NCBI RefSeq assembly: GCF_006345805.1
Contig: NW_021834371.1
Coordinates: forward strand, 1 to 49,522
Source: Octopus sinensis
Lineage: Eukaryota
Length of the DNA: 49,522 nucleotides
Direction: 5' to 3'
Program-made: the position numbers and the translations under genes
The notes under the pieces: generated by a model
What the model was told of the DNA's origin: nothing
Databases searched by the model: none
The model's input: only the letters and a program-made list of their open reading frames with translations
In this document: positions 5,662 to 42,289 of the stretch, one piece after another
Layout: each line of letters opens with the position of its first letter
Position numbering within the stretch: position 1 is the first letter of the stretch

Positions 5662-6541
5662 CCAAAAGAAAAAAAGCACAAGAACAAAGAAATGTGCGTC
5701 GGTTAATTTAATTTGCTATTTAAGTATGGTTTTCTTTTGCTTTACTTTAAGATGCCAAGAACAAAAATGAAATTTGGTGAAACAGTCTGGTTTCCAAAAG
5801 AGAAAGGTTTGTTTAGTAGATTTATAACGTCAATCGTTTATTAGAAAAAATACTTGGAATGTCTCTAAGTCCTTTGCCACAATTTCATTGACTTCAATAA
5901 ATAAATACTTTTATTTTACTAGTTTTCTTACTAGAGCTGCGGCCATGCTGGGGCACTGCCATTAAAATATAAATAAGAGCTCTTTGTCATGTCTGGCAGG
6001 GAACACATCAATCAACCAACACTTTGAGTTATTATAAATTCTAAGAAAATAAAACATAGGCGAGCCAAACGGAAATGTTGTAAGGTTATTATACGAACTA
6101 AAGCAACATACGCACTTGAAGTAGACTTAGATTAAAATACCGGAGTATGTAACATTTGCAATGTTTATGTAAATGTAGACCGGTACTAGCTGCAATATGT
6201 TGCTCCAGAGAATCTTCTTAAAGAGACTCTAGTGTTTAAAGGATAACAATAACTAAAATGGTTTTTGTTCAGAAAACTGCTGGATCGTCAGACCAGGCGT
6301 TTCTACTTGATTGTGTCCCCTCAGTGATGAGCACTCCAAACGTTCTGAGCCAAAAATGATTGTTCTGATATAGAAATCAGTACACGAAACATTTATTGAT
6401 ACGTGTTTAAACCAGAGATCTGAGCGAAGTCCTGTGTTTTGACTTTAACAAATGTCTCTTTGAGAAGTTTCTCAGACAAAATAGTGACGATTCACACGTG
6501 TATACACCTTATAGATATTATGCACAACGATATTATAATAT

Positions 6542-6773
6542 AAGGCGGTGAGCTGGCAGAAATGTTTGCATGCCAGACGAAATACTTAGCGGTATTTCGT
6601 CTGTCTTTGCGTTCTGAGTTCAAATTCCACTGAGGTCGACTTTGCCTTTCATCCTTTCGGGGTCAATAAATTAAGTACCAGTTATGCACTGGGGTCGATG
6701 TAATTGACTTAATACCTATGTCTGTCCTTGTTTGTTCCCTCTATGTTTAGCCCCTTGTGGGTAATAAAGAAAT
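6542..6773 (+). mobile_element. SINE-B monomer with Tx1-type 3' tail
   Basis: aaggcggtgagctggcagaa (A box)...gagttcaaattcc (B box)...gcctttcatcctttcggggtc..aaattaagtacc core...tttagccccttgtgggtaataaagaaata; imperfect 13-bp TSD gatattat(a/c)atat. Confidence 0.9.
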
Positions 6774-7767
6774 AGATATTATCATATGAACATTAAAAAT
6801 TTGCTTTTGACTGGAAATTCACCAAACAACCGCTTCAAAACAGTAGTTGGTGTCAAACAAGGGCGCGTTCTTTTACCAGCCTATTTCGGTGTGTTTCTAG
6901 GATACGTTATATGACGGAAACCCTTGAAGTTTTATTGAAGGAAGAGTGTAATCTTCCTTTTATCGATTGAACAGGACAAAATATAGAAACACTTAAAGAT
7001 CTAACAACTTGTCTTAGTACAACTGTAAGAAGATAAGAAATGGTTATTCCAGCTAAAAGAAAGAAGTAAAATAATGGTAATTGAATAAAGCAAAAAGAAA
7101 ATGCTAAATCCGATTGTAAGAGTAAGAAAGATTTTCATACAAGTTGATGATTTTTAAATATTTGGAGAAGAATAATAAAACGGAAGATGTGAGATCAAAT
7201 AAATAAAGAAATTAATGCCAGATTGCAGTAGCCATAGCAACTTCAGAAAAACCGGACCTCGTTGGGGGGGAAATAAGAAAAGATTAAAAGAATGGCAAAA
7301 TTTCGTTTTGTTGTGATCAATAATAACTTCAATTGCAATTTATGGGTGCGAATTATGGACGTTAGATGCTGAAAGTGCGAAGACGATGGCGTTTGAAATA
7401 AGATGTTATAGAAATGTAACAGAAAGATGCTTTTCAGCTCTATATAGAGAACATCAAGCTAACGAGGGTGATAAGGAAGAAATTGAGAGGAAGGCCGTGA
7501 ACCATAAAACTCTTCTGTCAATGTGATAAAAAGGTGAAAAATGATGTTGTAACACGACACCATGACACTCTGCCTTTAGAAAATATGGACATGTATAAAC
7601 AAGGCTCTGACTAAAGGGTGATAGGAAGATCCTGAAGAAGGTTGCTGAGTAACATCAAGGAATGGACAGGGGCGAAGGGTGTGGAAGGGGGTTGGCTGAT
7701 AACTAGGAGTAAAGAGGGAGAAGATTTGTGTCCCCTGTGCACCTACGTTAGCGCTAGACCATGTGCT

Positions 7768-8624: not shown

Positions 8625-9222
8625 TATTTCTTATTGCTCACAAGGGGCTAAACACAGAGGGGACAAACAAGGACAGACAAAAGGATTAAGTCGATTACAT
8701 CGACCCCAGTGTGAAACTGCTACTTTATTTATTGATCCCGAAAGGATGATAGGCAAAGTCGACCTCGGCTGAATTTGAACTCAGAACGTAATGGCAGACG
8801 AAATACCTATTTCTTTATTACCCACAAGGGGCTAAACACAGAGGGGACAAACAAGGACAGACAAAAGGATTAAGTCGATTACATCGACCCCAGTGTGAAA
8901 CTGGTACTTTATTTATCGACCCGAAAGGATGAAAAGCAAAGTCGACCTCAGCTGAATTTGGACTCAGAACGTAATGGCAGACGAAATACCTATTTCTTTA
9001 TTACCCACAAGGGGCTAAACATAGAGAGGACAAACAAGGACAGACATAGGTATTAAGTCGATTCCATCGACCCCAGTGCATAACAGGTACTTAATTTATC
9101 GATCCCGAAAGGATGAAAGGCAAAGTTGACCTCGGCGGAATTTGAACTCACAACGTAACGCAGACGAAATACCGCTAAGCATTTCGCTCGGCGTGCTAAC
9201 GTTTCTGCCAGCTCGCCGCCTT
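8625..9222 (-). mobile_element. SINE-B trimer: one head plus three 183-bp bodies
   Basis: Units start at 8625, 8808 and 8991; head ends at 9222; TSD ccgttcatatata at 8614-8626 and 9227-9239. Confidence 0.9.
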
Positions 9223-10362: not shown

Positions 10363-11367
10363 GAGCAACTCTGCCGTCCGGGACCGAACTTGTGCGACTC
10401 CATCACAACAAAGGCATTCTATAGAGGATTAGTGGAGGGGAGGTGCGACGACGAACTCGGGCAGAGTCTGGGCGTCGACGAGGAACACCTGACCCGCCTG
10501 TTCAGGACAACTTTCGGGCCGGGACCTATGAACAATCACCAAAGATCCCTGGCCTGGCAGTGCTATCGAGAAGCATTACCTGTTCGGGATAAGCTCTACA
10601 GACACGGTTCCAGACACACTGGACCGACTTGCCCGAGATGCGGTCAGAGCGACGAAACCGTTCTGCACGCACTCGTGCAATATCCAACCATTTCCAACCT
10701 GTGGGCTTATGCCGAACGGCTGCTGTCACGTGTGGGACGAATCCGCCTATCGGCCGAGTCTATCGTGAGAATTGCTCCGCCCCCTTCCCTCAACCGGGAA
10801 GGCAAGGCAGTTTTCATCGTACTGGTGGCCATGGTGAAAGAATGTGTGTGGTGGACTCGAGCGAAAGGATTAGAGACAAACACTTACCTCTCTGGCCAAT
10901 CGCTCATCAACTTTTTCAAGTACCACTTAAAGGAAGGTGAGAATGGAGAGGGAAGTTTTGTCTCGCGAAAGATTCAAAAAAAGATGGTGAATGTTGCAAA
11001 GATGGTGCGTGCTAGTAACGAAACCATTTTGAGCATGATCCTGTAGATCGTAAAAAGAGAGAAGAGAGCATTTTTGATCTCATGTGTTTATTTCCTCCCT
11101 GACTGGGGTTCCCGTGGTCTTTTCTGTAGGGCTTTTCTCCCACGGATGAACCCAATCTGTTTGTATCAATGTTTTACACCATTATTTCTGTGATACACGA
11201 TTTTCTTTTTTTTTTCCTTTTTTTTTTTTCCTCCTTTCGATCCCTTTTGATCGCAATCTTACATTTTTTTTTTTTTTTTTTTTTTTTTTTTCCACCCTCG
11301 AAAAGAAAAGCTCTGCATTTGTATTTGTCCCCTCTGTATTCAGCCCTGTGTGGCTAATAAAAGAAAG
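10363..11367 (+). mobile_element. 5'-truncated Tx1/L1-clade LINE with intact 3' end
   Basis: ORF 10390..11046 contains CPRCGQSDETVLHALVQ (CCHC-type region, final Cys read as Tyr); T-rich 3' UTR ending tttgtcccctctgtattcagccctgtgtggctaataaaagaaag; (TATC)n on both sides. Confidence 0.9.
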
Positions 11368-11440
11368 TTATCATCTATCTATCCATCTATCCATATCTAT
11401 CTATCTATCTATCTATATCTATCTATATATCTATCTATCC

Positions 11441-11696: not shown

Positions 11697-13881
11697 CGGG
11701 AGCATTCCTGGTTTTGTGAGCCGAGGAGCCGTAACACTGCTGAAGAAAGATCTAAACAAGGGAAATGTAATAGATAACTTTAGGCCCATCACTCTGCTTA
11801 ATGCAGACTTGAAAATTGGCCAAGGTGCTAGCCAAGAGGTGGCGCTTGTCATCGAGGAAACTGGTCGACAAGGCGCAAACATGCGCCGTGCCAGGCCGGA
11901 CCATCCATGACAACCTCCATCTGATGCGCTACATCATAGACAGGGTAGTTAACGAACCTGGCATGGGTGGGGCCCTGATCAACTTGGATCAATCAAAAGC
12001 CTTTGATAGGGTAGACCATCGATACTTGGAGGCAGTCCTGAGAGGGCTGGTTTCGGTCCCCGTCTCCGCGGCTGGATAGCTGCCTTGTACAGAGGCATCC
12101 GTTCGGTAATTCGCGTAAATGGACATCTATCGAGACCTTTCGACATTGCACGTTCGGTCCGTCAGGGATGCCCCCTCTCGGCGCTTCTATACGTATTGAC
12201 TCTTGAGCCACTACTGCGGAAGCTGGCGACTCTAAGGGCATCCCGCGAGAATTGGGAGCGGGACGAGCGTGTCTGCATACGCGGACGACGTCACCGTCAT
12301 AGTGTCTAGCCACGAGCACATCGAGCTGGTCGGCGAGACACTGAAAAACTACGAAGCGTTGACAGGAGCGAAAATCAACGGGAAAAGTCAGTGGGCTTGC
12401 GACTAGGCACCTGGAGAAGCAAGCCCATGCCGTCCACCAGCGCCTCCGTCGGGGACGCTGGACCGACGGCCCGGTTGAGTTGCTCGGGGTCTGGTTTGGT
12501 CCGGACCTCCAAGTGGAGAAGAACTGGAACGAGATAACGAGTAGGGTGGTCACTCTCGCCCGGCAAGGGCCGAGAGGAAAACTGTCCCTAAAAGGTCGAG
12601 CGGAGGTGGCGAACACGTACATCGCGTCCGTCATCTACTACCGCTGACCGTAGTACCTTGTCCCGACCCTACCATCACCAAACTACAACGCATCCTCTTT
12701 CGCTTCTTGTGGAAAGGATGCGTCCCGATGGTCAGGCGATCCATTTGCTGTCAACACCCGTTAAAAGGAGGGCTGGGCATGCCGTGGTTGATGATGCGCA
12801 GACACGCGCTGAGACTGCGACATCTCTGGCTCTATGTAGACGACGGTGAACAGGTGTGGTCGCCGTTTGTAGGCACGCTTTCCCGCAGCTCGTCTCCATG
12901 ACCGAACTGCAGTCGTGGATCAAAAGAGGCCGAGGAAGGGCGAATGGCACCGCGAGTGTCGCGTTGCTCTCAAGCAACTCTGCCGTCCTGGGTCGACCTT
13001 AAGTGACTTCAACACAACCAAAGCATTCTATAGGGGTTTAGTGGAGGGGAGGACGACGACGACGAGCTCGGGGCGGAACCTGGAGTCGACGAGGAGAGTA
13101 CCTGACCCGCCTGTCGGGACGACTTTCGGGCCAGGCCCATGGACAACTTCCAGAGATCCCTGGCCTGGCAGTGCTACCGAGAAGCGCTACCCGTTCGGGA
13201 TAAGCTCTACAGACACGGCTCGAGAAACACGGGGCCGACCTGCCCGAGATGCGGTCAGAGCGACGAAACCGTTCTGCACGCACTCGTTCAGTGTCCAACA
13301 ATTCCGACTGTGGGCTTATGTCGAACAACTGCTGTCACGTGTGGGACGAGTCGGTTTATCAGCTGAGTCTATCGTCAATATTGTCAACGCCTCCTTCCTT
13401 CAAACGGGAAGGAAGAGCTATTTTCATCATCTTGTGGCTATGGCGAAAGAATGTATCTGGTGGACGCGTCTGAAAGGATTGGAGACAAACACTTTCCTCT
13501 CTGGTCAATCTCTCACCAACTTCTTCAAGACCACTGAAAAGGAAAGTGAGAGTAGAGAGGCAAGTTTTGTCTAGCGAATGTTTTAAAAAAAGATGGGTGA
13601 ATGTAGCAAGAATGGCACGTATGAATGACGAAGCCACCTTGAGCATAGTCCTATGAACCCAGAAATCGAAAATAGAGAGTTGCTTATTTGCAAAAAAAAA
13701 AAAAAAAAAAAAAAGAATATAAAAATGTGACTTCATTGACCGAGGTTACCGTGTTCTTTCCGCAGGCTTTTCTTTCCACGGGTAAACCTCACCTGTCCTC
13801 CCCTTACACTTCATATTGACATTTCTGTGATAACGATCCCTATTGATCATTTTTTTTTCCTCTCCCCCCCCTTTTTTTTTT

Positions 13882-13915
<34 letters not shown>

Positions 13916-14068
13916 CCCCTTATTTTTGTCCTCTTTCTCTCCTTTTACGATCCCTTTTGATCGAACCCCCCCCTTCCTTTTTTTTTTTTTTTTTTAATAC
14001 CTTCAAAAGAAAGCTCTACCTTGTAATTTGTTCTATCTGTGTGCAGCCCTGTGGCTAATAAAGAAACA
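11697..14068 (+). mobile_element. 5'-truncated Tx1/L1-clade LINE (RT to 3' end), frameshifted
   Basis: RT motifs NFRPITLLNADLKI, AQTCAVPGRTIHDN, INLDQSKAFDRVDH, VRQGCPLSALLY, gcatacgcggacgacgtc (AYADDV), and C-terminal CPRCGQSDETVLHALVQC, spread across frames; ends cagccctgtggctaataaagaaa then (TATC)n. Confidence 0.92.
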
Positions 14069-14099
<31 letters not shown>

Positions 14100-14102
14100 T
14101 TG

Positions 14103-14145
<43 letters not shown>

Positions 14146-15944: not shown

Positions 15945-16460
15945 CTAGATGGATGAAGAGCTAGACAGATGGCTATGGAAGCGGCTACATGGACTGATGT
16001 CTGTTTATATTGAGAGATGGTTCAGATAGATAGATCGATGGATCGATTGATAGATAGACAGAGAAATAGATAGATGGATGGATGGATGGGTGGACAGATA
16101 GATAGATAAATAGATAGATAGATTGATAGATAGATAGACAGATGTTGGATAGACAAACAGACAGACAGATAGATAGATAGATGGTTGGATGGACAGACAG
16201 ACAGATAAGTAGCCAGATGGTTGGATGGACAGATAGCTAGCTAGCCAGATGGTTGGATGGACAGATAGATAGATAGATCGATTGATAGATATATGGAAAA
16301 ACAGGCAGATAGATAGACAGATAGATAGAGTGATAGACATTTGGTTGGATGGACATATAGATAGATAGATCGATAGAAAGATGGTTGGATGGACAAACAG
16401 GCAGATAGATAGACAGATAGATAGATTGATAGACAGATGGTTGTATGGACAGATAAATAA
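15945..16460. repeat. Degenerate (GATA)n/(GATG)n/(GACA)n tract
   Basis: Direct reading; reads (TATC)n-like on the minus strand, abutting the Tx1 3' end. Confidence 0.9.
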
Positions 16461-17878
16461 ATTTCTTTTATTGACCACACAGGGCTAAACACAGGGGAAA
16501 AATACAACTGTAGAATTTTTCTTTTCCGAAAATGGGTATTCGGAGTATTCAAAATGATCGAAAAACGATTTGGGACGTGTATATGCAAAAATTTTATTTT
16601 ACATAGTCGAGATCCCCCAAAGAGGGACAAAAAAAAAAAAAAGGAACAATAAGTTAATACTGGAAAGAAAAGCCTACGGAAAAGAACCACGATAACCTGG
16701 GTCATATAAAAAACATGAGAGCAAGGTGCTCTTTCCCCTTTTCTTTTCTTATATGTTCATGCTCAAAGTAGGTCCGTCATTCATGTGAAATCTTGCCGAG
16801 ACAAAACTTCCCTCTCTATTCTCACCTTCCTTCTCAAGTAGTACTTGAAAAAGTTGATGAGAGATTGGCCAGAGAGGGAAGTGTTTGTCTCTAAACCTTT
16901 CAAACGAGTCCACTATATACATTCTTTCGCTATAGCCACCAGTACGATAAAAACTGCCTTGATTTTCCGCTTAACGGAAGGTGGCGGGGCAATATTTACG
17001 ATAGACTCGGCTGATAGCCGGACACGTCCCACACGTTGACAGCAGCCGTTCGACATAGGCCCACAGCTCTGAAATATTTGTACACTGCACGAGTACGTTC
17101 AGAACGGTTTCATTGTTCTGATCACATCTCGGGTAGGTTGGACCGGTGTTTCTTGATCCGTGTCTGTAGGCCTCTCCGATAGCATTGCCAGGCCAGGGAT
17201 CTCTGGAGATTGTCCATGGATCCCGGCCCGAAAGTTGTCCTGAAAAGGCGAGTCAGGTGTCCCTCGCCGACGCCAAGATTCTTCCCAAGAACGCCGTCAC
17301 ACCTACCCTCCACTAACCCTCTATAGAACGCTTTTGTTGAACTCAAACCAGCCAAGTTTGAATCCGGTTAGCAGAGTTACCGCAGCGCTTGCCGACACTC
17401 GAGGTGCCATGCGCCCATCCTTGGTCTTTGCTTGATCCAGGAAAGTAACTTGCTAAATGAAACGAGTTGCGGAAAAGCCTGTCTGACAAACGGTGACCAC
17501 ACATCCTTTATGAACAGCTAGAGATGCCGCAGTCTCAGTGCATGTCTGCGCATCATTAACCACGGCATACACAACCCTCCATTTAGCGGATGTTAGACAG
17601 CAAATGGATCGCCTAACCATCGGAACTCTTCCCCGTCACAAAAAGCGCAAGAACAATCGTTCTAGTTTCCCGATGGTTGAATCGGGACAAGGTACGACGG
17701 TCAGACGGTAATCGATGATGGATGCGATATAAGCATTTGCCACCTCAGCCCGTCTGTTCAGAGATGGTTTTCTCTCGGCCTATATCTGGGTCAGAGTCAC
17801 TACCCTGATCGTTACTTCGTCCCTGTTCTTCTCCACTTGGAGGTCTGGACCGAACCAGACTCCGAGCAATTTAACCGG
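16461..17878 (-). mobile_element. 5'-truncated Tx1/L1-clade LINE, more decayed
   Basis: Reverse complement homologous to 12480-14068 (LVEGRCDG..FRTTFGPG..LQRSLAWQCY); 3' end ttttcccctgtgtttagccctgtgtggtcaataaaaagaaat. Confidence 0.88.
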
Positions 17879-24500: not shown

Positions 24501-27500
24501 GAGGAGGGGGAGGAAGGGGAGGAGGGAATGTTGTACATTTCAGAGAGGGGGATTTGAGAGGTAAAGGGAGGAGGGGGTGGAAAGAATATTTAACATTCCA
24601 GGGAGGGGGATTTGAGAGGTGAAGGGGAGGAAGGGGAGGAAGGAATGTTGAACATTCCGAGAGGGGGATTTGAGAGGTGAAGGGGAGGAAGGGGTGGATG
24701 GAATGTTGAACATTCCAGAGAGGGGGATCTGAGAGGTGAAGGGGAGGAAGGGAAGAAAGGAATGTTGAACATTCCAGAGATTGGGATTTGAGAGGTGAAG
24801 GGGTGGAAGGGGAGGAAGGAATGTTGAACATTCCAGAGTGGGGGATTTGAGAGGTGAAGGGGAGTAAGGGGAGGAAGCAATGTGGAACATTCACGAGAGG
24901 AGGATTTGAGAGGTGAAGGGGAGGATGGGGAGGAAGGAATGTTGAACATTCCAGGGAGGGGGATTTGAGAGCTGAAGGAGAGGAAGGGGAGGAGGGAATG
25001 TTGAACATTCCAGAGAGAGGGATTTGAGATGTGAAGGAGAGGAAGGGGAGGAAGGAATGTTGAACATTCCAGAGAGGGTGGTTTGAAAGGTGAAGGAGAG
25101 GAAGGGGAGGAAGGAATGTTGAACATTCCAGAGAGGGGGATTTGAGAGGTGAAGGAGAGGAAGGGGAGGAAGGAATGTTGAACATTGCAGAGAGGGGGAT
25201 TTGAGAGGTGAAGGGGAGGTAGGGGAGGAAGGAATGTTAAACATTCCAGAGAGGGGGATTTGAGTGGTGAAGGGGAGAAAGGGGAGGAAGGAATGTTGAA
25301 CATTCCAGAGAGGGGGATCTGAGAGGTGAAGGGGAGGAAGGGAAGGAAGGATTGTTGAACATTCCAGGGAGGGGGATTTGAGAGGTGAAGGGGAGGAAGG
25401 GGGAAGGAATGTTGAACATTCACGATAGGGGGATTTGAGAGGTGAAGGGGAGGAAGGGGAGGAAGGAATGTTGAACATTCCAGAGAGGGGTATTTGAGAG
25501 GAGAAGGTGAGGTATGGGAGGAAGGAATGTTTAACATTCCAGGGAGGGGGATTTGAGAGGTGAAGGGGAGGAAGGGGAGGAAGGAATGTTGAACATTCCA
25601 GAGAGGGGGATTTGAGAGGTGAAGGGGAGAAAGGAGAGGAGGGAAAGTTGAACATTCCAGTAAGGGTTATTTGAGAGGTGAAATCGATGAAATGGAGGAA
25701 GGAATGTTGAACATTCCAGAGAGGGGGATTTGACAGGTGAAGGGGAGGAATGGGAGGAAGGATTGTTGAACATTCCAGAGAGGGGGATTTGAGAGGTGAA
25801 GGGGAGGAAGGATTGTTGAACATTCCAGAGAGGGGGATTTTAGATTTGAAGGGGAGGAAGGGGAGGAAGGATTGTTGAACATTCCAGAGAGGGAGATTTT
25901 AGAGTTGAAGTGGAGGATGAGGAGGAAGGATTGTTGAACATTCCAGAGAAGGGATTTGAGAGGTGAAGGGGAGGAAGGGGAGGAAGGAATGTTGAACATT
26001 CCAGAGAGGGGGATTTTAGAGTTGAAGGGGAGGAAGGAGAGGAAGGATTGTTGAACATTTCAGAGAGGGGGATTTAACAGGTGAAAAATAGGAAGGGGAG
26101 GAAAGAATGTTGAACATTCCAGAGAGGGGAATTCGAGAGGCGTAGGGGAGGAAGGTGAGAAAGGAATGTTGAACATTCCAGAGAGGGGTATTTTAGATTG
26201 AAGGCAAGGAAAGGGAGGAAGCAATGTTGAACATTCCAGAGATGGGGATTTTAGAGGTGATGGGAGGGAAGGGGAGGAAGGAATGTTGTACATTCCAGAG
26301 AGGGGGATTTGAAGGTGAAGGGAAGGAAGTTGCGGAAGGAATATTGAACATTCCAGAGAGGGGGATTTGAATGTGAAAGGGAGGAAGGGGAGGAAGGAAT
26401 ATTGAAGATTTCAGAGAGGGGGATTTGAATGTAAAGGGAGGAAGGGGAGGAAGGAATATTGAAGATTTCAGAGAGGGGGATTTGAATGTGAAAGGGAGGA
26501 AGGGGAGGAAGGAATATTGAAGATTCCAGAGAGGGGGATTTGAAGGTGAAGGGGAGGAAGGGGAGGAAGGAATATTGAACATTCCAGAGAGGGGGATTTG
26601 AAGGTGAAGGGGAGGAAGGGGAGGAAGGAATATTGAACATTCCAGAGAGGGGGATTTGAAGGGGAAGGGGAGGAAGGGGAGGAAGGAATGTTGAACATTC
26701 CAGAGAGGGGGATTTTTAGGTGAATGGGAGGAAGGCGGAGCAAGGAAAGTTTGACATTCCAGAGAGGGGGATTTGAAGGTGAAGTGGAGGAAGGGGCGAA
26801 AGGAATATTGAACATTCCAGAGAGGGGGATTTGAAGGTGAAGGGAAGGAACGGGAAGAAGGAATATTGAACATTACAGAGAGGGGGATTTGAAAGCGAAG
26901 GGGAGGATGGGGCAGAAGGAATATTGAACATTCCAGAGAGGGGTATTTGAAGGTGAAGGGGAGGAAGGGGAGGATGGAATATTGAAAATTCCAGAGAGGG
27001 GGATTTGAAGGTGAAAGAAAGGAAGCGGAGGAAGGAATGTTGAACATTCCAGAGAGGGGGATTTGAAGGTGAAGGGAAGGAACGGGAAGAAGGAATATTG
27101 AACATTCCAGAGAGAGGATTGGAGGTGAAGGCAAGGAATGGGAGGAAGAAAGTTGAACATTCCAAGAGGGGGATTTTAAGGTGAAGGGGAGGAAGTGGTG
27201 GAAGGAATATTGAACATTCCAGAGAGGGGATTTGAAGGTGAAAGAAGGAAGCGGATGAAGGAATATTGAACATTCCAAGAGGGGGATTTGAAGGTGAAGG
27301 GGAGGAAGGGGAGGAAGAATATTGAACATTCCAGAGAGGGGGATTTGGAGGTGAAGCAAGGAAGGGGAGGAAGGAATATTGAACATTCCAGAGAGGGGAT
27401 TTGAAGGTGAAGGGGAGGAAGTGGTGGAATGAATATTGAACATTCCAGAGAGGGGGATTTAAAAGGTGAAGGGGAGGAAGGGGATGAAGGAATATTGAAC

Positions 27501-30500
27501 ATTCCAGAGAGGGGGATTTGAAGGTGAAGTGGAGGAAGGGGAGGAAGGAATATTGAACATTCCAGAGAGGCGGATTTGAAGGTGAAGGGGAGGAAGGAAT
27601 ATTGAACATTCCAGAGAGGGGGATTTGAAGGTGAAGGGGAGGAAGGGGAGGAAGGAATTTTGAACATTCCAGAGAGGGGGATTTGAAGGTGAAGGGGAGG
27701 AAGGGGAGGAAGGTATATTGAACATTCCAGAGAGGGGGATGTGAAGGTGAAGGGAAGGAACGGGAAGAAGGAATATTGAACATTCCAGAGAGGGGGATTT
27801 GAAGGTGAAGTGGAGGAAGGGGAGGAAGGTATATTGAACATTCCAGAGAGGGGGATTTGAAGGTGAAGGGGAGGAAGGTGATGAAGGAATATTGAACATT
27901 CCAGAGAGGGGCATTTGAAGGTGAAGGGGAGGAAGGGGCAGAAGGAATATTGAACATACCAGAGAGGGAGATATGAAGGTGAAGTGAAGGAAGGGGAATA
28001 AGAAATATTGAACAATCCAGAGAGGGGGATTTCAAGGTGAAGGGGAGGAAGGGGAGGAAGGAATATTGAACATTCCGGAGAGGGGGATTTGAAGGTGAAG
28101 GGAAGGAACGGGAAGAAGGAATATTGAACATTCCAGAGAGAGGGATTTGGAGGTGAAGGCAAGGAAGGTGAGGAAGGAATATTGAACATTCCAGAGAGGG
28201 GGATTTGAAGGTGAAGGGGAGGAAGTGGTGGAAGGAATATTGAACATTCCAGAGAGGGGGATTTGAAGGTGAAAGAAAGGAAGCGGAGGAAGGAATATTG
28301 AACATTCCAGAGAGGGGGATTTGAAGGTGAAGGGGAGGAAGGGAAGGAAGGAATATTGAACATTCCAGAGAGGGGGATTTGGAGGTGAAGGCAAGGAAGG
28401 GGAGGAAGGAATATTGAACATTCCAGAGAGGGGGATTTGAAGGTGAAGGGGAGGAAGTGGTGGAAGGAATATGAACATTCCAGAGAGGGGGATTTGAAGG
28501 TGAAGGGGAGGAAGGGAAGGAAGGAATATTGAACATTCCAGAGAGGGGGATTTGAAGGTGAAGGGGAGGAAGGGGAGGAAGGAATATTGAACATTCCAGA
28601 GAGGGGGATTTGAAGGTGAAGGGGAGGAAGTGGTGGAAGGAATATTGAACATTCCAGAGAGGGGGATTTGAAGGTGAAGGGGAGGAAGGGGATGAAGGAA
28701 TATTGAACATTCCAGAGAGGGGGATTTGAAGGTGAAGTGGAGGAAGGGGAGGAAGGAATATTGAACATTCCAGAGAGGCGGATTTGAAGGTGAAGGGGAG
28801 GAAGGAATATTGAACATTCCAGAGAGGGGGATTTGAAGGTGAAGGGGAGGAAGGGGAGGAAGGAATTTTGAACATCCAGAGAGGGGATTTGAGGTGAAGG
28901 GGAGGAAGAAGGGAGGAAGGTATATTGAACATTCCAGAGAGGGGGATGTGAAGGTGAAGGGAAGGAACGGGAAGAAGGAATATTGAACATTCCAGAGAGG
29001 GGGATTTGAAGGTGAAGTGGAGGAAGGGGAGGAAGTATATTGAAATTCCAGAGAGGGGGATTTGAGGTGAAGGGGAGGAAGGTGATGAAGGAATATTGAA
29101 CATTCCAGACGGGGGCATTTTGAAGGTGAAGGGGAGGAGGAAGGGCAGAAGGAATATTGAACATACCAGAGAGGGAGATATGAAGGTGAAGTGAAGGAAG
29201 GGGGAATAAGAAATATTGAACAATCCAGAGAGGGGGATTTCAAGGTGAAGGGGAGGAAGGGGAGGAAGGAATATGAACATTCCGGAGAGGGGGATTTGAG
29301 GTGAAGGGGAGGGAAGAAAGGACGGAAGAAGGAATATTGAACATTCCAGAGAGAGGGATTTGGAGGTGAAGGCAAGGAAGAGGTGAGGAAGGAATATTGA
29401 ACATTCCAGAGAGGGGATTTGAAGGTGAAGGGGAGGAAGTGGTGGAAGGAATATTGAACATTCCAGAGAGGGGGATTTGAAGGTGAAAGAAAGGAAGCGG
29501 AGGAAGGAATATTGAACATTCCAGAGAGGGGGATTTGAAGGTGAAGGGGAGGAAGGGAAGGAAGGAATATTGAACATTCCAGAGAGGGGGATTTGGAGGT
29601 GAAGGCAGGAAAGGGGAGGAAGGAATATGAACATTCCAGAGAGGGGATTTGAAGGTGAAGGGGAGGAAGTGGTGGAAGGAATATGAACATTCCAGAGAGG
29701 GGGATTTGAAGGTGAAGGGGAGGAAGGAAAGGAAGGAATATTGAACATTCCAGAGAGGGGGATTTGAAGGTGAAGTGGAGGAAGGGGAGGAGGAAGGAAT
29801 ATGAACATTCCAGAGAGGGGGATTTGAAGGTGAAGGGGAGGAAGGGAAGGAAGGAATATTGAACATTCCAGAGAGGGGGATTTGAAGGTGAAGGAGAGGA
29901 AGGGGAGGAAGGAATATTGAACATTCCAGAGAGGGGGACTTGAAGGGTAAGGGGAGGAAGGGAAGGAAGGAATATTGAACATTCCAGAGAGGGGGATTTG
30001 AAGGTGAAGGGTAGGAAGCGGAGGAAGCAATATTGAACATTCCAGAGAGGGGGATTTGAAGGTGAAGGGGAGGAAGGGGAGGAAGGAATATTGAACATTC
30101 CAGAGAGGGGGATTTGAAGGGTAATGGGAGGACGGGGAATAATGAATATTGAACATTCCAGAGAGGGGGATTTGAAGGTGAAGGGAAGGAACGGGAAGAA
30201 GGAATATTGAACATTCCAGAGAGGGGGATTTGAAGGTGAAGGGGAGGAAGGAGCAGAAGGAATATTGAACATTCCAGAGAGGGAGATATGAAGGTGAAGG
30301 GAAGGAACGGGAATAAGAAATATTGAACAATCCAGAGAGGGGGATTTCAAGGTGAAGGGGAGGAAGGGGAGGAAGGAATATTGAACATTCCAGAGAGGGG
30401 GATTTGAAGGTGAAGGGAAGGAACGGGAAGAAGGAATATTGAACATTCCAGAGAGGGGGATTTGAAGGTGAAGGGGAGGAAGGGGAAGAAGGAATATTGA

Positions 30501-33055
30501 ACATTCCAGAGAGGGGGATTTGAAGGTGAAGGAGAGGAAGGGGAGGAAGGAATATTGAACATTCCAGAGAGGGGGACTTGAAGGGTAAGGGGAGGAAGGG
30601 GAGAGGAGTATGAATATTGAACATTCCAGAGAGGGGGATTTGAAGGGAAGGAAGGAAGGGAAGGAAGGGAAGAAGGAATATTGAACATTCCAGAGAGGGG
30701 ATTTGAAGGTGAAGGGGAGGAAGGGGAGGAAGGAATATTGAACATTCCAGAGAGGGGGATTTGAAGGTGAAGGAGAGGAAGGGGAGGAAGGAATATTGAA
30801 CATTCCAGAGAGGGGGACTTGAAGGGTAAGGGGTGGAAGGGAAGGAAGGAAGATATTGAAATTCCAGAGAGGGGATTTGAAGGTGAAGGGAAGGAACGGG
30901 AAGAAGGAATATTGAACATTCCAGAGAGGGGGATATGAAGGTGAAGGGGAGGAAGGGAAGGAAGGAATATTGAACATTCCAGAGAGGGGGATTTGAAGGT
31001 GAAGGAGAGGAAGGGGAGGAAGGAATATTGAACATTCGAGAGAGGGGGACTTGAAGGTTAAGGGGAGGAAGGGAAGGAAGGAATTGAACATTCAGAGAGG
31101 GGGATTGGGAAGGTGAAGGGAAGAAGGACGGGGAGAAGGAATATTGAACATTCCAGAGAGGGGGATTTGAAGGTGAAGGGAGGAAGGGAAGGAAGGAATA
31201 TTGAACATTCCAGAGAGGGGGATTTGAAGGTGAAGGGGAGGAAGGGGAGGAAGGAATATTGAACATTCCAGAGAGGGGGATTTGAAGGTGAAGGAGAGGA
31301 AGGGAAGGAGGGAATATTGAACATTCCAGAGAGGGGGACTTGAAGGTGAAGTGAAGGAACGGGAAGAAGGAATATTGAACATTCCAGAGAGGGGGATTTG
31401 AAGGTGAAGGGAAGGAACGGAAAGAAGGAATATTGAACATTCCAAAGAGGGGGATTTGAAGGTGAAGGGGAGGAAGGGGCGAAAGGAATATTGAACATTC
31501 AAGAGAGGGAGATTTAAAGGTGATGGGAAGGAACGGGAAGAAGAAATATTGAACTTTCCAGAGAAAGGGATTTGAAGGTGGAGTTGACGAACGGGAAGTA
31601 GGAATATTGAACATTCCAGAGAGAGGGATTTGAAGGTGAAGGGGAGAACCGTGATTAAGGCATGTTGGACATTCCAGAGAGGGGGATCCGAAGGTGAAGG
31701 GGAGGAAGGAATATTGAACATTCCAGAGAGGAGGATTTTAGAGGTGAATTGTAGGAAGGCGAGGAAGGATTTTTGAACATTCCTGAGAGGGGGATTTGAA
31801 GGTGAAGGGGAGGAAGGTGTGGAAGGAATGTTGAACATTCCAGAGGGGAGATTTGAGAGGTGAAGTGAGGAAGGGAAGGAAGGAATGTTGAACATTCCAG
31901 AGGGGGGATTTGAGAGGTGAATTGGAGGAAGGGGAGGAAGGAATGTTTAACATTCCAGAGAGGGGGATTTGAAGGTGAAGGGGAGGAAGGGGTGGAAGGA
32001 ATATTGAACATTCCAGACATGGGGATTTTAGAGGTGATGGGGAGGAAGGCGAGGCAGGATTGTTTAACATTCCTGAGAGGGTGATTTGAAGGTGAAGGGG
32101 TGGAAGTGGTGTAAGGAATGTTGAACATTCCAGAGGGGTGATGTGAGAGGTGAAGGGGAGGAAGGGGAGGAATCAATGTTGAACATTCCAGAGGGGGGAT
32201 GTGAGAGGTGAAATGGAGGAAGGGGCGGAAGTAATGTTGAACATTCCAGAGAGGGGGATTTGAGAGGTGAAAGTGAGGAAGGGGAGGAAGGAATGTTTAA
32301 CATTCCAGAGAGGCGTATTTGAGAGGTGAAGGGGTGGAAGTGGAGGTAGGAATGTTGAACGTTCCAGAGTGATGGATTTGAGAGGTGAAGGGGAGGAAGG
32401 GGAGGAAGGAATGTTGAGTATTTCAGAGTGGGGTATTTGTAAGGTGAAGTGGAGGCAGGGAGGAACGAATGTGAACATTCTAGAGAGGGGGATGTGAGAG
32501 GCGAAGGTGTGGAAGGGGAGGAGTAATATAGAACAATTTAGAGTGGGGGGATTTGAAGGTGAAGGGGAGGAAGGGGAGGAAGCAGAGGGGTTAACGTTGA
32601 ACATTCTATAGAAGTGGATTTGAGAGGGAAGTGGAAGAATTGAATGGTGCAATGCTGATATACTAGAGAGGGTGAGTTGAAGGGGAAGGGGGGAGGAAGG
32701 GGAGTGAAGAATGTTGATCATTTCAGAGATGTGTATTTCAGAGGTGAAGGGGAGGAAGAGGATGAAGGAAGTTTGAACATTTCAGAGAGGGGGATTTGAG
32801 AAGAGAAGGTGAGGAAGGGGAGGGAGGAATATTGAACATTCCAAAGAGGGTTTTCTGCGAGGTGAATGGGAGGATAGGGAGGAAGGAATGTTGAACATTC
32901 TAGAGATGGGGATTTGTGACGGAAGGGTAAGGTCTATTTGAGAAAGGTAAGTTGAGGAAGTAATCTCGACCATTCCATAGATGGTTGTTTGAGATGAGTA
33001 TTGTAGGATAGGTTGGAAGGGGGCAATGGAAGGAAGGGGTGGAATTGGTGGAATG
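21510..33055 (+). repeat. ~11.5 kb purine-rich satellite/minisatellite, 58-59 bp unit, roughly 195-200 copies
   Basis: Unit GGAAT(G/A)TTGAACATTCCAGAGAGGGGGATTTGA(G)AGGTGAAGGGGAGGAAGGGGAGGAA; copy number estimated as length divided by unit length. Confidence 0.97.
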
Positions 33056-33262
33056 AAATCCCCCTCTTCTGGAATGTTCAACATTCCTTCCTCTGCTTCC
33101 TACCCTTCACTTCTCAAATCCCCCTCTGGGGAATGTTCAACATTCCTTCCCCACCTTCAATTCTCAAATCCTTCTCTCTGGAATATTGAACATTCCTTCC
33201 TCTCCTTCCTCCCCTCCACCTTTAAAATACCCCTCTCTAGAATGTTCAACATTCCTCCCCCA
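33056..33262 (-). repeat. Inverted block of ~3.5 satellite units
   Basis: aaatccccctcttctggaatgttcaacattccttcc... is the reverse complement of the unit. Confidence 0.92.
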
Positions 33263-34480: not shown

Positions 34481-34663
34481 GAAAGAGAGGGCGTTGAGAA
34501 AGTGAAAGAGACATGGTAGTTCAAGAAGAATGAGAAAGGGAGGGAGAGTTTAAAAGATATAGGAGACAAAAATGATAAACGAGTGTGTATGTATGCATGT
34601 GTGTGTATGTGTGTGCGTGTGTGCGCATGAGCGAAAGCGTGTGTACTTCTGTTCTTATATATA

Positions 34664-35926
34664 CAGCCTTGGCTAGAAGTACTAGACCACCCCAATGTTT
34701 AGGGGTTCCGCTATCACAACGTTAATGAAACTCGTGCTCATGGTAGACTATGGTATATTTCGCAATATACAGTAGTTCTATTATCTGGTTGACCCTTCTT
34801 TAGCATCAATTACCTATTTCTTTACTACCCACAAGGGGATACACACAAAGGGGACAAACAAGGACAGACAAACGGATTAAGTCGATTACATCGACCCCAG
34901 TGCGTAACTGGTACTTAATTTATCGGCCCCAAATTGATGAAAGGCAAAGTCGACCTCAGCGGAATTTGAACTCAGAACGTAGCGGCAGACGAAATACCTA
35001 TTTCTTTACTACCCACAAGAGGCTACACACAAAGGGGACAAACAAGGACAGACAAAGGGATTAAGTCGATTACATCGACCCCAGTGCGTAACTGGTACTT
35101 AATTTATCGACCCCAAAAGGATGAAAGGCAAAGTCAACCTCAGCGGAATTTGAACTCAGAACGTAGCGGCAGACGAAATACCAATTTCTTTACTACCCAC
35201 AAGAGGCTACACACAAAGGGGACAAATAAGGACAGACAAAGGGATTAAGTCGATTACATCGACCCCAGTGCGTAACTGGTACTTAATTTATCGGCCCCAA
35301 AAGGATGAAAGGCAAAGTCGACCTCAGCGGAATTTGACCTCAGAACGTAGCGGCAGACGAAATATCTATTTCTTTACTACCCAGAAGGGGCTACACACAA
35401 AGGGGACAAACAAGGACAGACAAAGTGATTAAGTCGATTACATCGACCACAGTGCGTAACTGGTACTTAATTTATCAACACCAAAAGGATGAAAAGCAAA
35501 GTCGACCTCAGCGGTATTTGAACTCAGAACGTAGCGGCAGACGAAATACTGCTTAGCATTTCGCCCGGCGTGCTAACGATTCTGCCAAAACACCGCCTTC
35601 AATTAGCATCAATTACGATTTTTATACTGTATTGGACACATGCAACCAATTATGAGTAAAACCAACGTCCAAAATTAACTCATGTTTCCTTGATTCTTTC
35701 AGAGTTAATATAAGTTAATTTTGGATGTTGGTCTAACTTATAATTGGTTGCGTATCTACAGTACAGTATAAAATCGGTAATTGATGCTAAAGGAGGGTCC
35801 ACCAGATATTGAAACTAATGTATTTTGTTAAATATACCATAGTCTACCATGTGCACGAGTTTCATTAACATTGTGATAGCAGAACCCCAAAACATTGGGG
35901 TGGCCTAATACTTTTGGCCAAGGCTG
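34664..35926. mobile_element. Tc1/mariner-like foldback MITE (~460 bp without the insert), interrupted by a SINE-B tetramer
   Basis: TA|cagccttggctagaagtactagaccaccccaatg... and ...cattggggtggcctaatacttttggccaaggctg|TA; arms stay complementary for ~200 bp once the SINE is removed. Confidence 0.88.
34814..35599 (-). mobile_element. SINE-B tetramer: one head plus four ~184-bp bodies
   Basis: Units start at ~34814, 34999, 35183 and 35367; TSD ttagcatcaattac at 34800-34813 and 35603-35616. Confidence 0.92.
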
Positions 35927-36199
35927 TACATTGTGCATATGCATGGGTAAATGCACATCTATGTGGATGTGTTAGAGAGACAAAGAGAGATTGAGACACA
36001 GGTTGAGAGAGAGAGAGAGAAAGAGAGAGGAAGATAGATAGATAGAGAGAGAGCGATGGAGAGAAGGAGTAAAGGTATTACATACTCCAAGTGTGTTACA
36101 TACTAAGAAGGGAAACAGAGAAAGCGAATAAAATCTCAAAGACAGAAACTAAGGTGCCTTGCGATAAAAAGGGACTGTGTTTACGTACATAAACGAACA

Positions 36200-41231: not shown

Positions 41232-41250
41232 CGTGCGCGTGTGCATATAT

Positions 41251-41460
41251 TCTTTTATTCTTTTACTTGTTTCAGTCATTTGACTGCGGCCATACTGGAG
41301 CACCGATTTTAGTTGAACAAATGGACCCCAGGACATATTCTTTGTAAGCCTAGTACTTATTCTATCGGGCTCTTTTGTCGAACCAGTAAGTTACGGGGAA
41401 GTAAACACACCAGCATCGGTTGTCTAGCGATGTTGGGGTGACAAAGACAGATACTCAAAC
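41251..41460 (-). mobile_element. SINE-A 3' half with CR1-type tail
   Basis: Reverse complement ends ggtgctccagtatggccgcagtcaaatgactgaaacaagtaaaagaataaaaga. Confidence 0.88.
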
Positions 41461-41485
41461 AGAAAAGAATTATTACAAAAACTAT

Positions 41486-41855
41486 AAGCTGGCAGAATCG
41501 TTAGCACGCTAGACGAAAAGCTTAGCGGTATTTCGCCCGAGGTCAACTTTGCCTTTCATCCTTTCGGGGTCGATAAATTAAGTACCAGTTACGCACTGGG
41601 GTCGATATAATCGACTTAATCCGTTTGTCTGTCCTTGTTTGTCCTTTCTGTGTTTAGCCCCTTGTGGGTAGTAAAGAAATAGGTATTTCGCCCGAAGCTA
41701 TGTTCTGAGTTCAAATTCGGCCGAGGTTGACTTTGCCTTTCATCCTTTCGGGGTCAATAAATTAAGTACCAGTTGTGTACTGGGTTGATCTAATCGACTG
41801 GCTCCCTCCCCAAAAATTTTGGGCGTTGAGCCTCGAGCAGAAAATAATATTATTG
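41486..41855 (+). mobile_element. SINE-B (alternative tail) containing a 5'-truncated Tx1-tail SINE-B insert at 41541-41681
   Basis: Direct repeat ggtatttcgcccga at 41527-41540 and 41682-41695 flanks the insert; the host copy ends in ...ccctccccaaaaattttgggcgttgagcc. Confidence 0.85.
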
Positions 41856-41856
41856 T

Positions 41857-42085
41857 AAGGCAGCGAGCTGACAGAAACGTTAGCACGCTGGGCGAAATGC
41901 TTAGCAGAATTTCGTCTCTCTTTACGTTCTGAGTTCAAATTCGGCCGAGGTCGACTTTGCCTTTCATCCTTTCGGGGTCGATAAATTAAGTACCAGTTGC
42001 GTACTGGGGTTGATCTAATCGACTGCCCCCCCCCACCACTTTCTCAAAAATTTTGGGCCTTGTTCCTCTAGTAGAAACAATTAGT
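41857..42085 (+). mobile_element. SINE-B monomer with alternative tail
   Basis: aaggcagcgagctgacagaa head, core, tail ...ctcaaaaattttgggccttgttcctctagtagaaac. Confidence 0.85.
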
Positions 42086-42289
42086 AACGGTCTGAATTCT
42101 GTTGAACAATAATAACATATATTTAGAATACCTTTCGTCATATTCCACAGAATAAGTATATCCATTGAAGAATACCCCATACTTTAATTTCATGACAAAC
42201 AGCATTACTTTCACTAAAAAAAACTTAGCGGTGTTATGTGACAGACCTCTCGGCTTATGTACATCTCGACTTATGTGCGACGATATGTG

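What the first reader, a model, noticed from the sequence alone, without database searches (positions are those of the whole stretch)
41486..41855. Self-targeting: Tx1-tailed SINE inserted into another SINE-B at GC^GGTATTTCG with a clean 14-bp TSD
Seen: a 5'-truncated Tx1-tail SINE-B (41541-41681) lies between two copies of ggtatttcgcccga, inside a SINE-B with a different tail. The 3' junction AAGAAATA|GGTATTTCG is the same junction found between units of the trimer (8625-9222) and the tetramer (34814-35599). The tails differ, so this case cannot be tandem duplication. Inference: the Tx1 endonuclease prefers a site between the A and B boxes of the SINE itself. An insert there keeps the upstream A box and supplies a new B box, so arrays could grow without losing the Pol III promoter. 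Other SINE-B 3' flanks are similar (GGTAATTG in array 2, GATATTAT at 6774).
Basis: partly seen in the sequence, partly recalled or inferred. Interest (0 to 1): 0.75.

Follow-up and report, generated by a model that had tools for sequence, protein, structure and literature searches.

The report
SINE inserted into SINE at hotspot
In an octopus genome, one short retroposon (SINE) has most likely inserted into another at the exact base where the same SINE family joins its units into short tandem arrays; this suggests a preferred insertion site that seeds the arrays, but it is a variant of known retroposon behaviour.

Summary
GGTATTTCGCCCGA occurs only twice in the window (41527-41540, 41682-41695). 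The two copies bracket a 141-bp 5'-truncated SINE-B (41541-41681) with a LINE-derived tail, inside a SINE-B with a different tail. Its 3' junction, AAGAAATA|GGTATTTCG, is the junction of all five internal joints of the trimer and tetramer.

Best reading (about 0.55): an ordinary target-primed insertion with a 14-bp duplication and a microhomology 5' joint, at a recurrently used site. Four points support recurrence:
- Trimer unit 1 belongs to a different subfamily from units 2-3, so that joint is also heterologous.
- Other insertion sites of these tails begin with similar sequences (C^GATAT, C^GTAAT), and two O. sinensis sites start with TATTTC.
- Three of four partner LINE copies abut (TATC)n.
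- The tail is the 3' end of an L1/Tx1-type LINE.

Corrections:
- The inner copy lacks the B box, so here the promoter is split, not renewed.
- The tetramer units share four private changes, so array growth looks like local duplication after seeding.
- Both arrays occupy single insertion sites.
- Tx1 clade membership and the head's tRNA origin are unproven.

No genome-wide count was possible. Precedents exist (SINEU-3 tandems, squamate SINE satellites).

The parts
41486..41526 (+). Head of the outer (host) SINE-B. It is slightly 5'-truncated and contains the A-box-like TGGCAGAATCG at 41490-41500.
   Evidence: Aligns to the heads of other SINE-B copies (D2).
41527..41540 (+). Upstream copy of the 14-bp target-site duplication GGTATTTCGCCCGA. 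Its last bases overlap by microhomology with the inner SINE (ATTTCGCCCGA against SINE ATTCCGCCGA).
   Evidence: (D4)
41541..41681 (+). Inner SINE-B, 5'-truncated just after the B box (starts GGTCAAC), with the LINE-derived tail 1 ending AAGAAATA.
   Evidence: 93.6% identical to an O. sinensis tail-1 monomer and 92-93% to window tail-1 units.
41682..41695 (+). Downstream copy of the 14-bp duplication.
41696..41855 (+). Rest of the outer SINE-B: B-box-like GAGTTCAAATTCG at 41707-41719, body, and tail 2.
   Evidence: 85% identical to the neighbouring tail-2 copy. Shares TTCGGCC and GTTG.GTACTGGG.TTGATCTAATCGACTG with it.
41857..42095 (+). Full-length tail-2 SINE-B lying head-to-tail directly after the composite.
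8625..9222 (-). SINE-B trimer: one head plus three 183-bp units joined AAGAAATA|GGTATTTCG. Unit 1 is of the same subfamily as the 6541 monomer; units 2-3 are of another. Flanked by TATATGAACGG at 9227-9237 and 8614-8624.
34815..35602 (-). SINE-B tetramer: one head plus four 184-bp units that share four private changes. Flanked by GTAATTGATGCTAA at 35603-35616 and 34800-34813.
35707..35931 (+). Uninterrupted arm of an inverted repeat, serving as a paralogous empty site for the tetramer. It carries a single copy of the 14-mer at 35777-35790.
   Evidence: The joined flanks align to it without a gap, 84.6% identity.
6541..6774 (+). Monomeric tail-1 SINE-B, flanked by GATATTAT (6529-6536 and 6775-6782).
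10363..11368 (+). 5'-truncated copy of the partner LINE (zf-RVT C-terminus). Its last ~45 nt match SINE tail 1. It has (CTAT)n/(TATC)n on both sides (10122-10362 and 11369-11696).
12579..14067 (+). Second copy of the same LINE; its 3' end runs into (TATC)n at 14069-14157.
16460..17779 (-). Third copy of the same LINE; its 3' end runs into (ATCT)n (16438-16024 on the minus strand).

Best explanation
The composite is a nested retroposition. An older SINE-B with tail 2 was nicked on the bottom strand between GCTTAGC and GGTATTTCG. A tail-1 SINE-B RNA, recognised through its LINE-derived 3' end by an L1/Tx1-type LINE protein, was then reverse-transcribed from that nick. The cDNA was joined at its 5' side where it best matched the staggered target end (target ...ATTTCGCCCGA against SINE ...ATTCCGCCGA). 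This cut the copy off just after its B box and left a 14-bp target duplication.

The same site is used repeatedly because it resembles what this LINE group prefers (C^G.TAT / TATTTC / TATC-like sequence). When the host stretch at the site still matches the incoming copy, the 5' joint forms in register. That gives a head-unit-unit dimer whose joint is AAGAAATA|GGTATTTCG. Such dimers then gain units mostly by unequal recombination or replication slippage.

Shown: the duplication, the truncation, the shared LINE tail, the identity of the joint position, the mixed subfamilies in the trimer, and the single insertion site of each array.

Inferred: the endonuclease or priming preference, the in-register joining, and seeding followed by local expansion.
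For: - The 14-mer occurs twice only, is identical between copies, and carries private changes.
- The inner copy is tail 1, close to tail-1 units (92-94%). The outer is tail 2, 85% identical to its neighbour, so a younger element sits inside an older one.
- The duplication length fits the family: 8, 11-13, 14 and 14-15 bp elsewhere.
- Tail 1 is the 3' end of a LINE with a zf-RVT domain in three octopod genomes. That LINE shows weak similarity to human L1 ORF2p.
- Trimer unit 1 groups with the 6541 monomer (92.9%, four exclusive sites), while units 2-3 group together (95.1%, six exclusive sites). The unit 1|unit 2 joint is therefore a second heterologous joint at the same base.
- Independent targets are C^GATATTAT, C^GTAATTG and TATATG in the window, and TATTTCACC (with its own 14-15-bp duplication) and TATTTCTGC in O. 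sinensis. TATTTC is expected about 0.0006 per position, so two hits within 3 nt of about 16 junctions has a chance of about 4e-4.
- Three of four LINE copies abut (TATC)n, and one has it on both sides.
- Precedent: Tx1-mobilised SINEU-3 forms tandems by sequential insertion around a duplicated target (PMC4494074).
Against: - No genome-wide count was possible. The sample is one 49.5-kb window plus about 65 kb of O. sinensis, which held one tail-1 monomer and no array.
- The two TATTTC sites belong to tail-2 elements, whose LINE is related but not shown to be the same.
- The SINE contains other sequences similar to known targets (CGATAAAT, TGTAATCG) that are not used.
- The tetramer units share four derived states, so most array joints need no insertion.
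- The host stretch next to the 14-mer (GGTATTTCG...GCTATG) looks tail-1-like, so a recombinant history is possible.
- SINE-B pairs with other joints exist (L006 3863-3465; 41855/41857).
- No orthologous empty site was obtained.
Confidence: 0.55

Rival explanations
1. The composite began as an ordinary in-register tail-1 dimer (head-unit-unit), as in the arrays. Unit 1 then lost 29 bp by slippage between CCGA repeats. Unit 2 acquired its 3' part from a tail-2 SINE-B, for example the adjacent one, by unequal crossover or gene conversion. On this reading the 14-mer identity is unit homology, not a target duplication.
For: - Dimers and arrays with exactly this joint are common here: two of four tail-1 loci.
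- The spacing between the two bodies is the array period, 184 bp (D1).
- GGTATTTCG is otherwise seen only in tail-1 copies; tail-2 and tail-3 copies have G(C/A)ATTTCG.
- The deletion end points share CCGA.
- A tail-2 copy that shares the rare TTCGGCC variant lies next door.
- This history explains the position match without any hot spot.
Against: - It needs three events, against one for the nested insertion.
- The crossover must fall inside about 20 nt, so that no comparable stretch other than the 14-mer survives.
- Sequence right after the 14-mer region already carries the tail-2 variant TTCGGCC.
- It does not explain the heterologous unit 1|unit 2 joint of the trimer.
Confidence: 0.15
2. The junctions arise in a single retroposition event by reverse-transcriptase template switching. 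While copying one SINE-B RNA, the enzyme stops near GG/UAUUUCG and jumps to the 3' end of another SINE RNA. In the composite it then jumps back to the first RNA 14 nt downstream, recopying the 14-mer. No endonuclease preference is involved.
For: - Each array has only one head and one pair of flanking duplications.
- Units of different subfamilies can sit in one array.
- In Argonauta hians, a simple tRNA-SINE with the same LINE tail forms head-to-tail trimers of full-length units with spacers of only 1-16 nt, as expected for end-to-end jumping.
- Template jumping and switching are documented for non-LTR enzymes (cited in PMC4494074).
Against: - Jumps normally occur at the 5' end of the template, not 50 nt inside it.
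- The composite would need two switches, with a return to the same molecule.
- No complementarity between the nascent cDNA end and the acceptor 3' end was found at this site (read from the sequence).
- A 14-bp repeat of typical target-duplication length is what ordinary insertion predicts.
Confidence: 0.12
3. Coincidence plus descent. The composite is a random nested insertion that happened to land at this base. The arrays are copies of, or local duplications from, a multimeric master SINE whose joint arose once.
For: - Both arrays are flanked by single target duplications, as expected if multimers retrotranspose as one RNA.
- The tetramer units are homogeneous.
- Dimeric SINEs that amplify as dimers are well known (PMC10702118).
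Against: - An exact-base match has a chance of about 1 in 230.
- The trimer mixes two subfamilies.
- Independent non-SINE targets resemble the site.
Confidence: 0.13

Closest known systems
Tandem SINEU-3 insertions made by target-specific Tx1 LINEs in crocodilians (Kojima 2015, PMC4494074)
   Same: A SINE mobilised by a Tx1-type LINE with sequence preference. Because the target is duplicated on insertion, it can be hit again, giving tandem SINEs that 'sandwich' a target duplication. This is the layout of head-14mer-inner-14mer-body here.
   Different: In crocodilians the target lies in an unrelated DNA transposon (Mariner-N4_AMi) and whole SINEs are repeated. Here the target lies inside the SINE itself, so the repeated units lack the head and the duplication is hidden when the joint is in register. 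The preference here is inferred from few sites, and the clade of the LINE is unproven.
SINE-derived satellites of squamate reptiles and SINE multimers (Vassetzky et al. 2023, PMC10702118)
   Same: Tandem repeats of part of a SINE, with ordinary SINE sequence at both ends of the array. The proposed origins are unequal recombination and repeated insertion into one locus.
   Different: The arrays here are very short (3-4 units). One composite preserves a visible target duplication at the repeat boundary, which points to insertion as the seeding step. The taxon and SINE family are different.
Alu insertions into the A-rich linker and tails of older Alus via the L1 endonuclease preference TT^AAAA (from my own knowledge, not checked here)
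   Same: The element carries a sequence that matches its partner's nicking preference, so copies pile up inside or next to older copies at defined positions.
   Different: The target here is not a homopolymer tail but a specific internal site, C^GGTATTTCG, between the promoter boxes. The partner is a stringent-type LINE that recognises a shared 3' tail.
Microsatellite-targeting Tx1-clade LINEs: Kibi (TC)n, Koshi (TTC)n, crocodilian (TTCC)n/(TTTC)n families (Kojima and Fujiwara 2004, as cited in PMC4494074)
   Same: The LINE that shares the SINE's tail is found abutting (TATC)n in three of four copies, and once with the repeat on both sides.
   Different: (TATC)n is not among the targets listed in that paper. 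With four copies, I cannot separate targeting from a repeat that grows at the LINE's own 3' end.

Membership tests
Nested target-primed (LINE-mediated) retroposon insertion | Direct target-site duplication flanking the insert exactly | tested here: met
   The 14/14 identical copies at 41527-41540 and 41682-41695 occur nowhere else in the window.
Nested target-primed (LINE-mediated) retroposon insertion | Complete 3' end carrying the LINE recognition tail, with variable 5' truncation | tested here: met
   The inner copy ends ...GTAGTAAAGAAATA like all tail-1 copies and starts at GGTCAAC, lacking the head and B box.
Nested target-primed (LINE-mediated) retroposon insertion | Empty site without the insert | tested here: inconclusive
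   All other SINE-B copies are uninterrupted at this base, which gives paralogous empty sites. No orthologous or allelic empty site could be fetched. For the tetramer, a paralogous empty site exists.
SINE mobilised by a stringent-type LINE through a shared 3' tail | The last tens of bases of the SINE match the 3' end of a LINE in the same genome | tested here: met
   The LINE 3' ends at window 11368, 14067 and 16460, O. sinensis L003 11069 and A. hians L004 11191 all match ...GTCCCCTCT.TGTTT.GCCCTTGTGGCTAATAAAGAAA.
Tx1 clade of L1-superfamily LINEs | Phylogenetic placement of the reverse transcriptase within Tx1 | not tested
   Only C-terminal fragments of this LINE are in the window. They have a zf-RVT domain and a CCHC motif and weak similarity to human L1 ORF2p (E about 0.01). 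L1-Tx1 is the only L1-type group listed among recently active O. vulgaris LINEs (PMC13282606). This is suggestive only.
Tx1 clade of L1-superfamily LINEs | Sequence-specific or strongly preferred targets | tested here: inconclusive
   Three of four LINE copies abut (TATC)n, one on both sides. The SINE targets share C^G.TA(T/A)T. The sample is too small.
tRNA-derived SINE with internal Pol III A and B boxes | Head recognisable as tRNA-like | tested here: not met
   ARAGORN finds no tRNA in the window. Rfam finds no tRNA match at E<=10 in 41400-42150.
tRNA-derived SINE with internal Pol III A and B boxes | B-box and A-box motifs at tRNA-like spacing | tested here: inconclusive
   GAGTTCAAATTCC is a good B-box match and TGGCAGAAACG a weak A-box match, by eye. 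The spacing of about 62 nt is longer than in tRNA genes. Transcription was not tested.
SINE-derived tandem array (sSat-like) | Head-to-tail repeats of part of a SINE, bounded by normal SINE ends | tested here: met
   TRF reports period 183 x 3.0 copies and period 184 x 4.0 copies. Each array has one head and one terminal tail.
   Met at trimer unit 1 against units 2-3. Not met for the tetramer (four shared private states, 92-97% identity) or for trimer units 2-3 (95%).
   In the composite the inner copy begins after the B box, so the host B box is pushed 155 bp downstream. It holds only for the in-register arrays.

The most novel reading that the evidence does not exclude
A Tx1-type LINE in octopods has a nicking or priming preference that is matched by one site inside its own SINE partner. 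Insertions there are resolved in register by homology between the incoming cDNA and the host SINE, so retroposition itself, not only recombination, seeds and lengthens tandem arrays. This would be a direct, observable route from a dispersed repeat to a satellite-like repeat. The related head-to-tail SINE trimers in Argonauta would be another product of the same machinery.
Probability: 0.3. Interest if true: 0.65.

Novelty: new variant of a known kind. Interest (0 to 1): 0.45.

Why it matters
How dispersed repeats turn into tandem repeats is usually explained by recombination, with little direct evidence for the first step. Here one locus keeps the footprint of that first step: a target duplication at the repeat boundary, at the same base where neighbouring arrays are joined. 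If a genome-wide count confirms the hot spot, octopus SINE-B would be a tractable case of array seeding by a sequence-preferring LINE. SINEs make up about 12% of the genome in octopus (PMC13282606). A confirmed hot spot would also affect repeat annotation, because arrays and nested copies inflate SINE counts and age estimates. If the count does not confirm it, this is an ordinary nested insertion next to ordinary short SINE arrays.

Tried and rejected
- I scanned metagenome contigs for the tail-1 3' end. There were two hits, both chance matches in AT-rich phage-like contigs with no SINE.
- I scanned bacterial/archaeal genome contigs and viral contigs for the SINE core. There were no hits.
- I ran a protein search with the 54-aa antisense ORF that spans the array joint, hoping to reach octopus assemblies. 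There were no candidates.
- Fetching loci through LINE proteins worked only modestly. It gave three O. sinensis loci (65 kb; five SINE-B copies, one of them tail 1), two A. hians loci (one without any tail-1 element), and short Logan/JGI contigs that stop before or at the LINE 3' end.
- ARAGORN and Rfam gave no tRNA or other family for the SINE head, and nothing for the upstream element X (41245-41477), which I had suspected of being 5S-derived.
- Literature searches for the SINE sequence and for octopus SINE arrays found nothing specific.
- I considered pairing between the SINE 3' end (GAAAUA) and the site (UAUUUC) as a priming or switching aid and rejected it. For a same-orientation insertion the complementarity lies on the wrong strand.
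- I considered insertion of trimer units 2-3 downstream of unit 1's tail and rejected it. No duplication of the flanking TATATGAACGG separates them.

Full report
**What the window is.** The sequence is eukaryotic, AT-rich and full of microsatellites, SINEs and truncated LINEs. LINE protein fragments from it find their nearest named relatives in Octopus sinensis and Argonauta hians. Loci fetched from the O. sinensis assembly GCA_006345805.1 carry the same SINE family at 88-94% identity. The window therefore comes from an octopus close to O. sinensis; the exact species is not known.

**The observation.**
- GGTATTTCGCCCGA lies at 41527-41540 and again at 41682-41695. It occurs nowhere else in 49.5 kb.
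- Between the two copies lie 141 bp (41541-41681) of a SINE-B copy. It begins at GGTCAAC, just after the B-box-like motif, and ends in tail 1: ...CTTAATCCGTTTGTCTGTCCTTGTTTGTCC...GTGGGTAGTAAAGAAATA.
- The element around it has a head at 41486-41526. Its body and a different tail 2 (...CCCCAAAAATTTTGGGCGTTGAGCCTCGAGCAGAAAATAATATTATT) lie at 41696-41855.
- A full-length tail-2 copy follows directly at 41857-42095.
- The trimer (8625-9222, minus strand) and the tetramer (34815-35602, minus strand) each consist of one head plus units of 183-184 bp. The units are joined AAGAAATA|GGTATTTCG, with single-base variants at two tetramer joints.

**The tail and its LINE.**
- The ORF at 10390-11046 has a zf-RVT domain.
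- About 320 bp downstream, the sequence ends ...TTTGTCCCCTCTGTATTCAGCCCTGTGTGGCTAATAAAAGAAAG. This matches the last ~45 nt of SINE tail 1.
- The same 3' end closes homologous LINE copies in O. sinensis (L003) and A. hians (L004).
- tblastn maps four 5'-truncated copies of this LINE in the window: 1786 to about 1000 (-), 10363-11368 (+), 12579-14067 (+) and 17779-16460 (-).
- The C-terminus carries a CPRC...H...C motif and is weakly similar to human L1 ORF2p. The LINE is therefore of the L1 superfamily.
- A recent O. vulgaris annotation lists L1-Tx1 as the only L1-type group among recently active LINEs (PMC13282606). 'Tx1' is plausible, but I did not test it by phylogeny.
- Tails 2 and 3 share the box GCC(C)TTGTG(G/C)C with tail 1. 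They probably come from related LINEs.

**Is the 14-mer a target duplication?** Four lines of evidence bear on this.
- An alignment of all units shows this stretch is the most variable part of SINE-B. Other copies read GGTATTTCGTCTGCC...TCTGTC...TCTCTC or ...TCCGTC. Both copies in the composite read CGCCCGA.
- The bodies on either side belong to different subfamilies. The inner reads GTTACGCACTGGGGTCGAT.TAATCGACTT, like the tail-1 units. The outer reads GTTGTGTACTGGGTTGATCTAATCGACTG and TTCGGCC, like its tail-2 neighbour.
- The inner copy is 92-94% identical to tail-1 units. The outer is only 85% identical to its nearest relative. A younger element therefore sits inside an older one.
- The 5' joint shows microhomology. 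The end of the 14-mer (ATTTCGCCCGA) resembles the SINE's own ATTCCGCCGA just before GGTCAAC. This explains where the copy was cut off and is the usual way LINE-made cDNAs are joined.

Duplication lengths elsewhere in the family are 8, 11-13, 14 and 14-15 bp. A nested target-primed insertion is therefore the simplest history.

**The rivals for the composite.**
- The strongest rival starts from an in-register tail-1 dimer. Unit 1 then lost 29 bp between CCGA repeats, and unit 2 was recombined with a tail-2 copy. This cannot be excluded. After such a deletion and crossover, the only comparable stretch left would be the 14-mer itself. GGTATTTCG is otherwise seen only in tail-1 copies. But this history needs three events and a crossover confined to about 20 nt.
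- A double template switch by the reverse transcriptase is also conceivable, but contrived.

**Is the site special?** The insertion point equals the array joint to the base. For a random hit in a SINE of about 230 bp, that is roughly a 1-in-230 chance. Three further observations argue that the joint forms repeatedly.
- *The trimer is mixed.* Unit 1 groups with the 6541 monomer (92.9% identity, four exclusive sites). Units 2-3 group with each other (95.1%, six exclusive sites). Unit 1 is only 89-90% identical to units 2-3. The unit 1|unit 2 joint therefore also links unrelated copies.
- *Independent target sites look alike.* In the window they are C^GATATTAT (monomer), C^GTAATTGATGCTAA (tetramer) and TATATGAACGG (trimer). 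In O. sinensis there is a tail-2 copy with a 14-15-bp duplication that begins TATTTCACC, and another copy followed by TATTTCTGC. TATTTC occurs about 0.0006 times per position. Two hits within 3 nt of about 16 independent junctions is unlikely by chance (about 4e-4). However, those two elements carry tail 2.
- *The partner LINE is itself choosy.* Three of four copies run straight into (TATC)n-type microsatellites. Copy 10363-11368 has the repeat on both sides. This resembles the microsatellite-targeting Tx1 families cited by Kojima (PMC4494074).

**What the arrays say.**
- Each array occupies one insertion site. The trimer is flanked by TATATGAACGG and the tetramer by GTAATTGATGCTAA.
- The tetramer lies in one arm of an inverted repeat. 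The other arm (35707-35931) is intact and has a single copy of the 14-mer. The joined flanks align to that arm without a gap at 84.6% identity, giving a paralogous empty site.
- The four tetramer units share four derived states that no other copy has, and they are 92-97% identical to each other. The same holds for trimer units 2-3.
- Growth of an array is therefore best explained by local duplication (unequal exchange or slippage), or by copying from one multimeric source. Four separate hits are less likely.
- My model is seeding by insertion at the preferred site, with in-register resolution when the host stretch still matches the incoming cDNA, followed by local expansion.

- The inner copy lacks the B box. 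In the composite, the A-like motif (41490) and the B-like motif (41707) are 217 nt apart instead of about 62. The promoter is split, not renewed. The 'new B box' argument holds only for in-register arrays.
- ARAGORN and Rfam find no tRNA in the head. 'A and B boxes' therefore rest on motif resemblance only.
- T4 runs that could stop Pol III occur in tail 2 and, after CpG decay, in the tetramer units.
- SINE-B copies also lie head-to-tail at other positions: 41855/41857 here and L006 3863-3465 in O. sinensis.

**Comparison with known cases.**
- The closest precedent is Kojima's SINEU-3, mobilised by a target-specific Tx1 LINE. [quoted passage not shown]
- Vassetzky et al. describe SINE-derived satellites with ordinary SINE sequence at both ends. 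They name unequal recombination and insertion into the same locus as origins, and they mention SINE multimers in jerboa.
- What differs here is that the preferred site lies inside the SINE itself, and that one locus still shows the duplication at the unit boundary. I rate this a new variant of a known kind.

**Limits.** I could not count junctions genome-wide. The public collections I could scan by DNA hold no octopus sequence. The protein route yielded only about 65 kb of O. sinensis. All statements on preference rest on about 16 junctions.

Noticed in passing
window 10122-11696; 14047-14157; 16024-16480: The LINE that shares the SINE tail ends directly in (TATC)n-type microsatellites in three of its four copies. 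Copy 10363-11368 has the microsatellite on both sides. This suggests a (TATC)n-targeting L1/Tx1-type LINE, or a repeat that grows at its 3' end.
   Followed up: partly
window 34659-34819 / 35596-35686 / 35707-35931: The tetramer is inserted in one arm of an inverted repeat of about 230 bp with a ~20-nt loop (foldback or MITE-like). The intact arm serves as a paralogous empty site with a single copy of the 14-bp target.
   Followed up: yes
L004 (Argonauta hians) 4900-5350 (+) and 14125-13670 (-): There are two head-to-tail trimers of a simple ~155-bp tRNA-like SINE that carries the same LINE tail. The units are full length, with spacers of 1-16 nt. Units of the second trimer are strongly diverged from each other. 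Same-orientation clustering of SINEs with this tail is therefore not limited to Octopus SINE-B.
   Followed up: partly
L006 (O. sinensis) 3863-3465 (-): This is a SINE-B pair in which the second copy is 5'-truncated at a different position (tail ...AAAGGATTA|CACTGGACAAAATGC) and is followed by TATTTCTGC. It shows that composites also join at other positions.
   Followed up: partly
window 41245-42095: Three repeats lie head-to-tail in one orientation: an unclassified ~230-bp repeat X (41245-41477, with copies in O. sinensis L005/L006, ending ...CAGAAAAGAATTATTAC like tail 2), the composite, and a full-length tail-2 SINE-B. No common flanking duplication was evident.
   Followed up: partly
window 21583-32927 (and inverted fragment 33056-33262): An 11.3-kb minisatellite of a 58-bp G/A-rich unit (GAAGGGGAGGAAGGGGAGGAAGGAATGTTGAACATTCCAGAGAGGGGGATTTGAGAGGT) gives a GC skew near +0.8. 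A short stretch of the same unit lies in the opposite orientation just downstream.
   Followed up: no
window 18474-20535 (+): A second LINE fragment carries endonuclease and reverse-transcriptase domains. Its relatives include crustacean elements at about 55% identity. Whether it is the 5' part of the tail-1 LINE family is unknown.
   Followed up: partly
window ~1020-880 (-): Another SINE type (...GACACTTGCTCAAGGTGCCACGCAGTGGGACTGAACCCGGAACCATGTGGTTGG...) interrupts the 3' UTR of the LINE copy at 1786-1000. It has 86-98% identical copies in O. sinensis L006.
   Followed up: no
window 45922-45740 (-), 45532-45402 (-): Two further SINE-B copies carry a third tail (...GCCCTTGTGGCAAAATTTGAAGCC) and a tail-2-like end. 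All three tails share the box GCC(C)TTGTG(G/C)C, which hints at related partner LINEs.
   Followed up: partly
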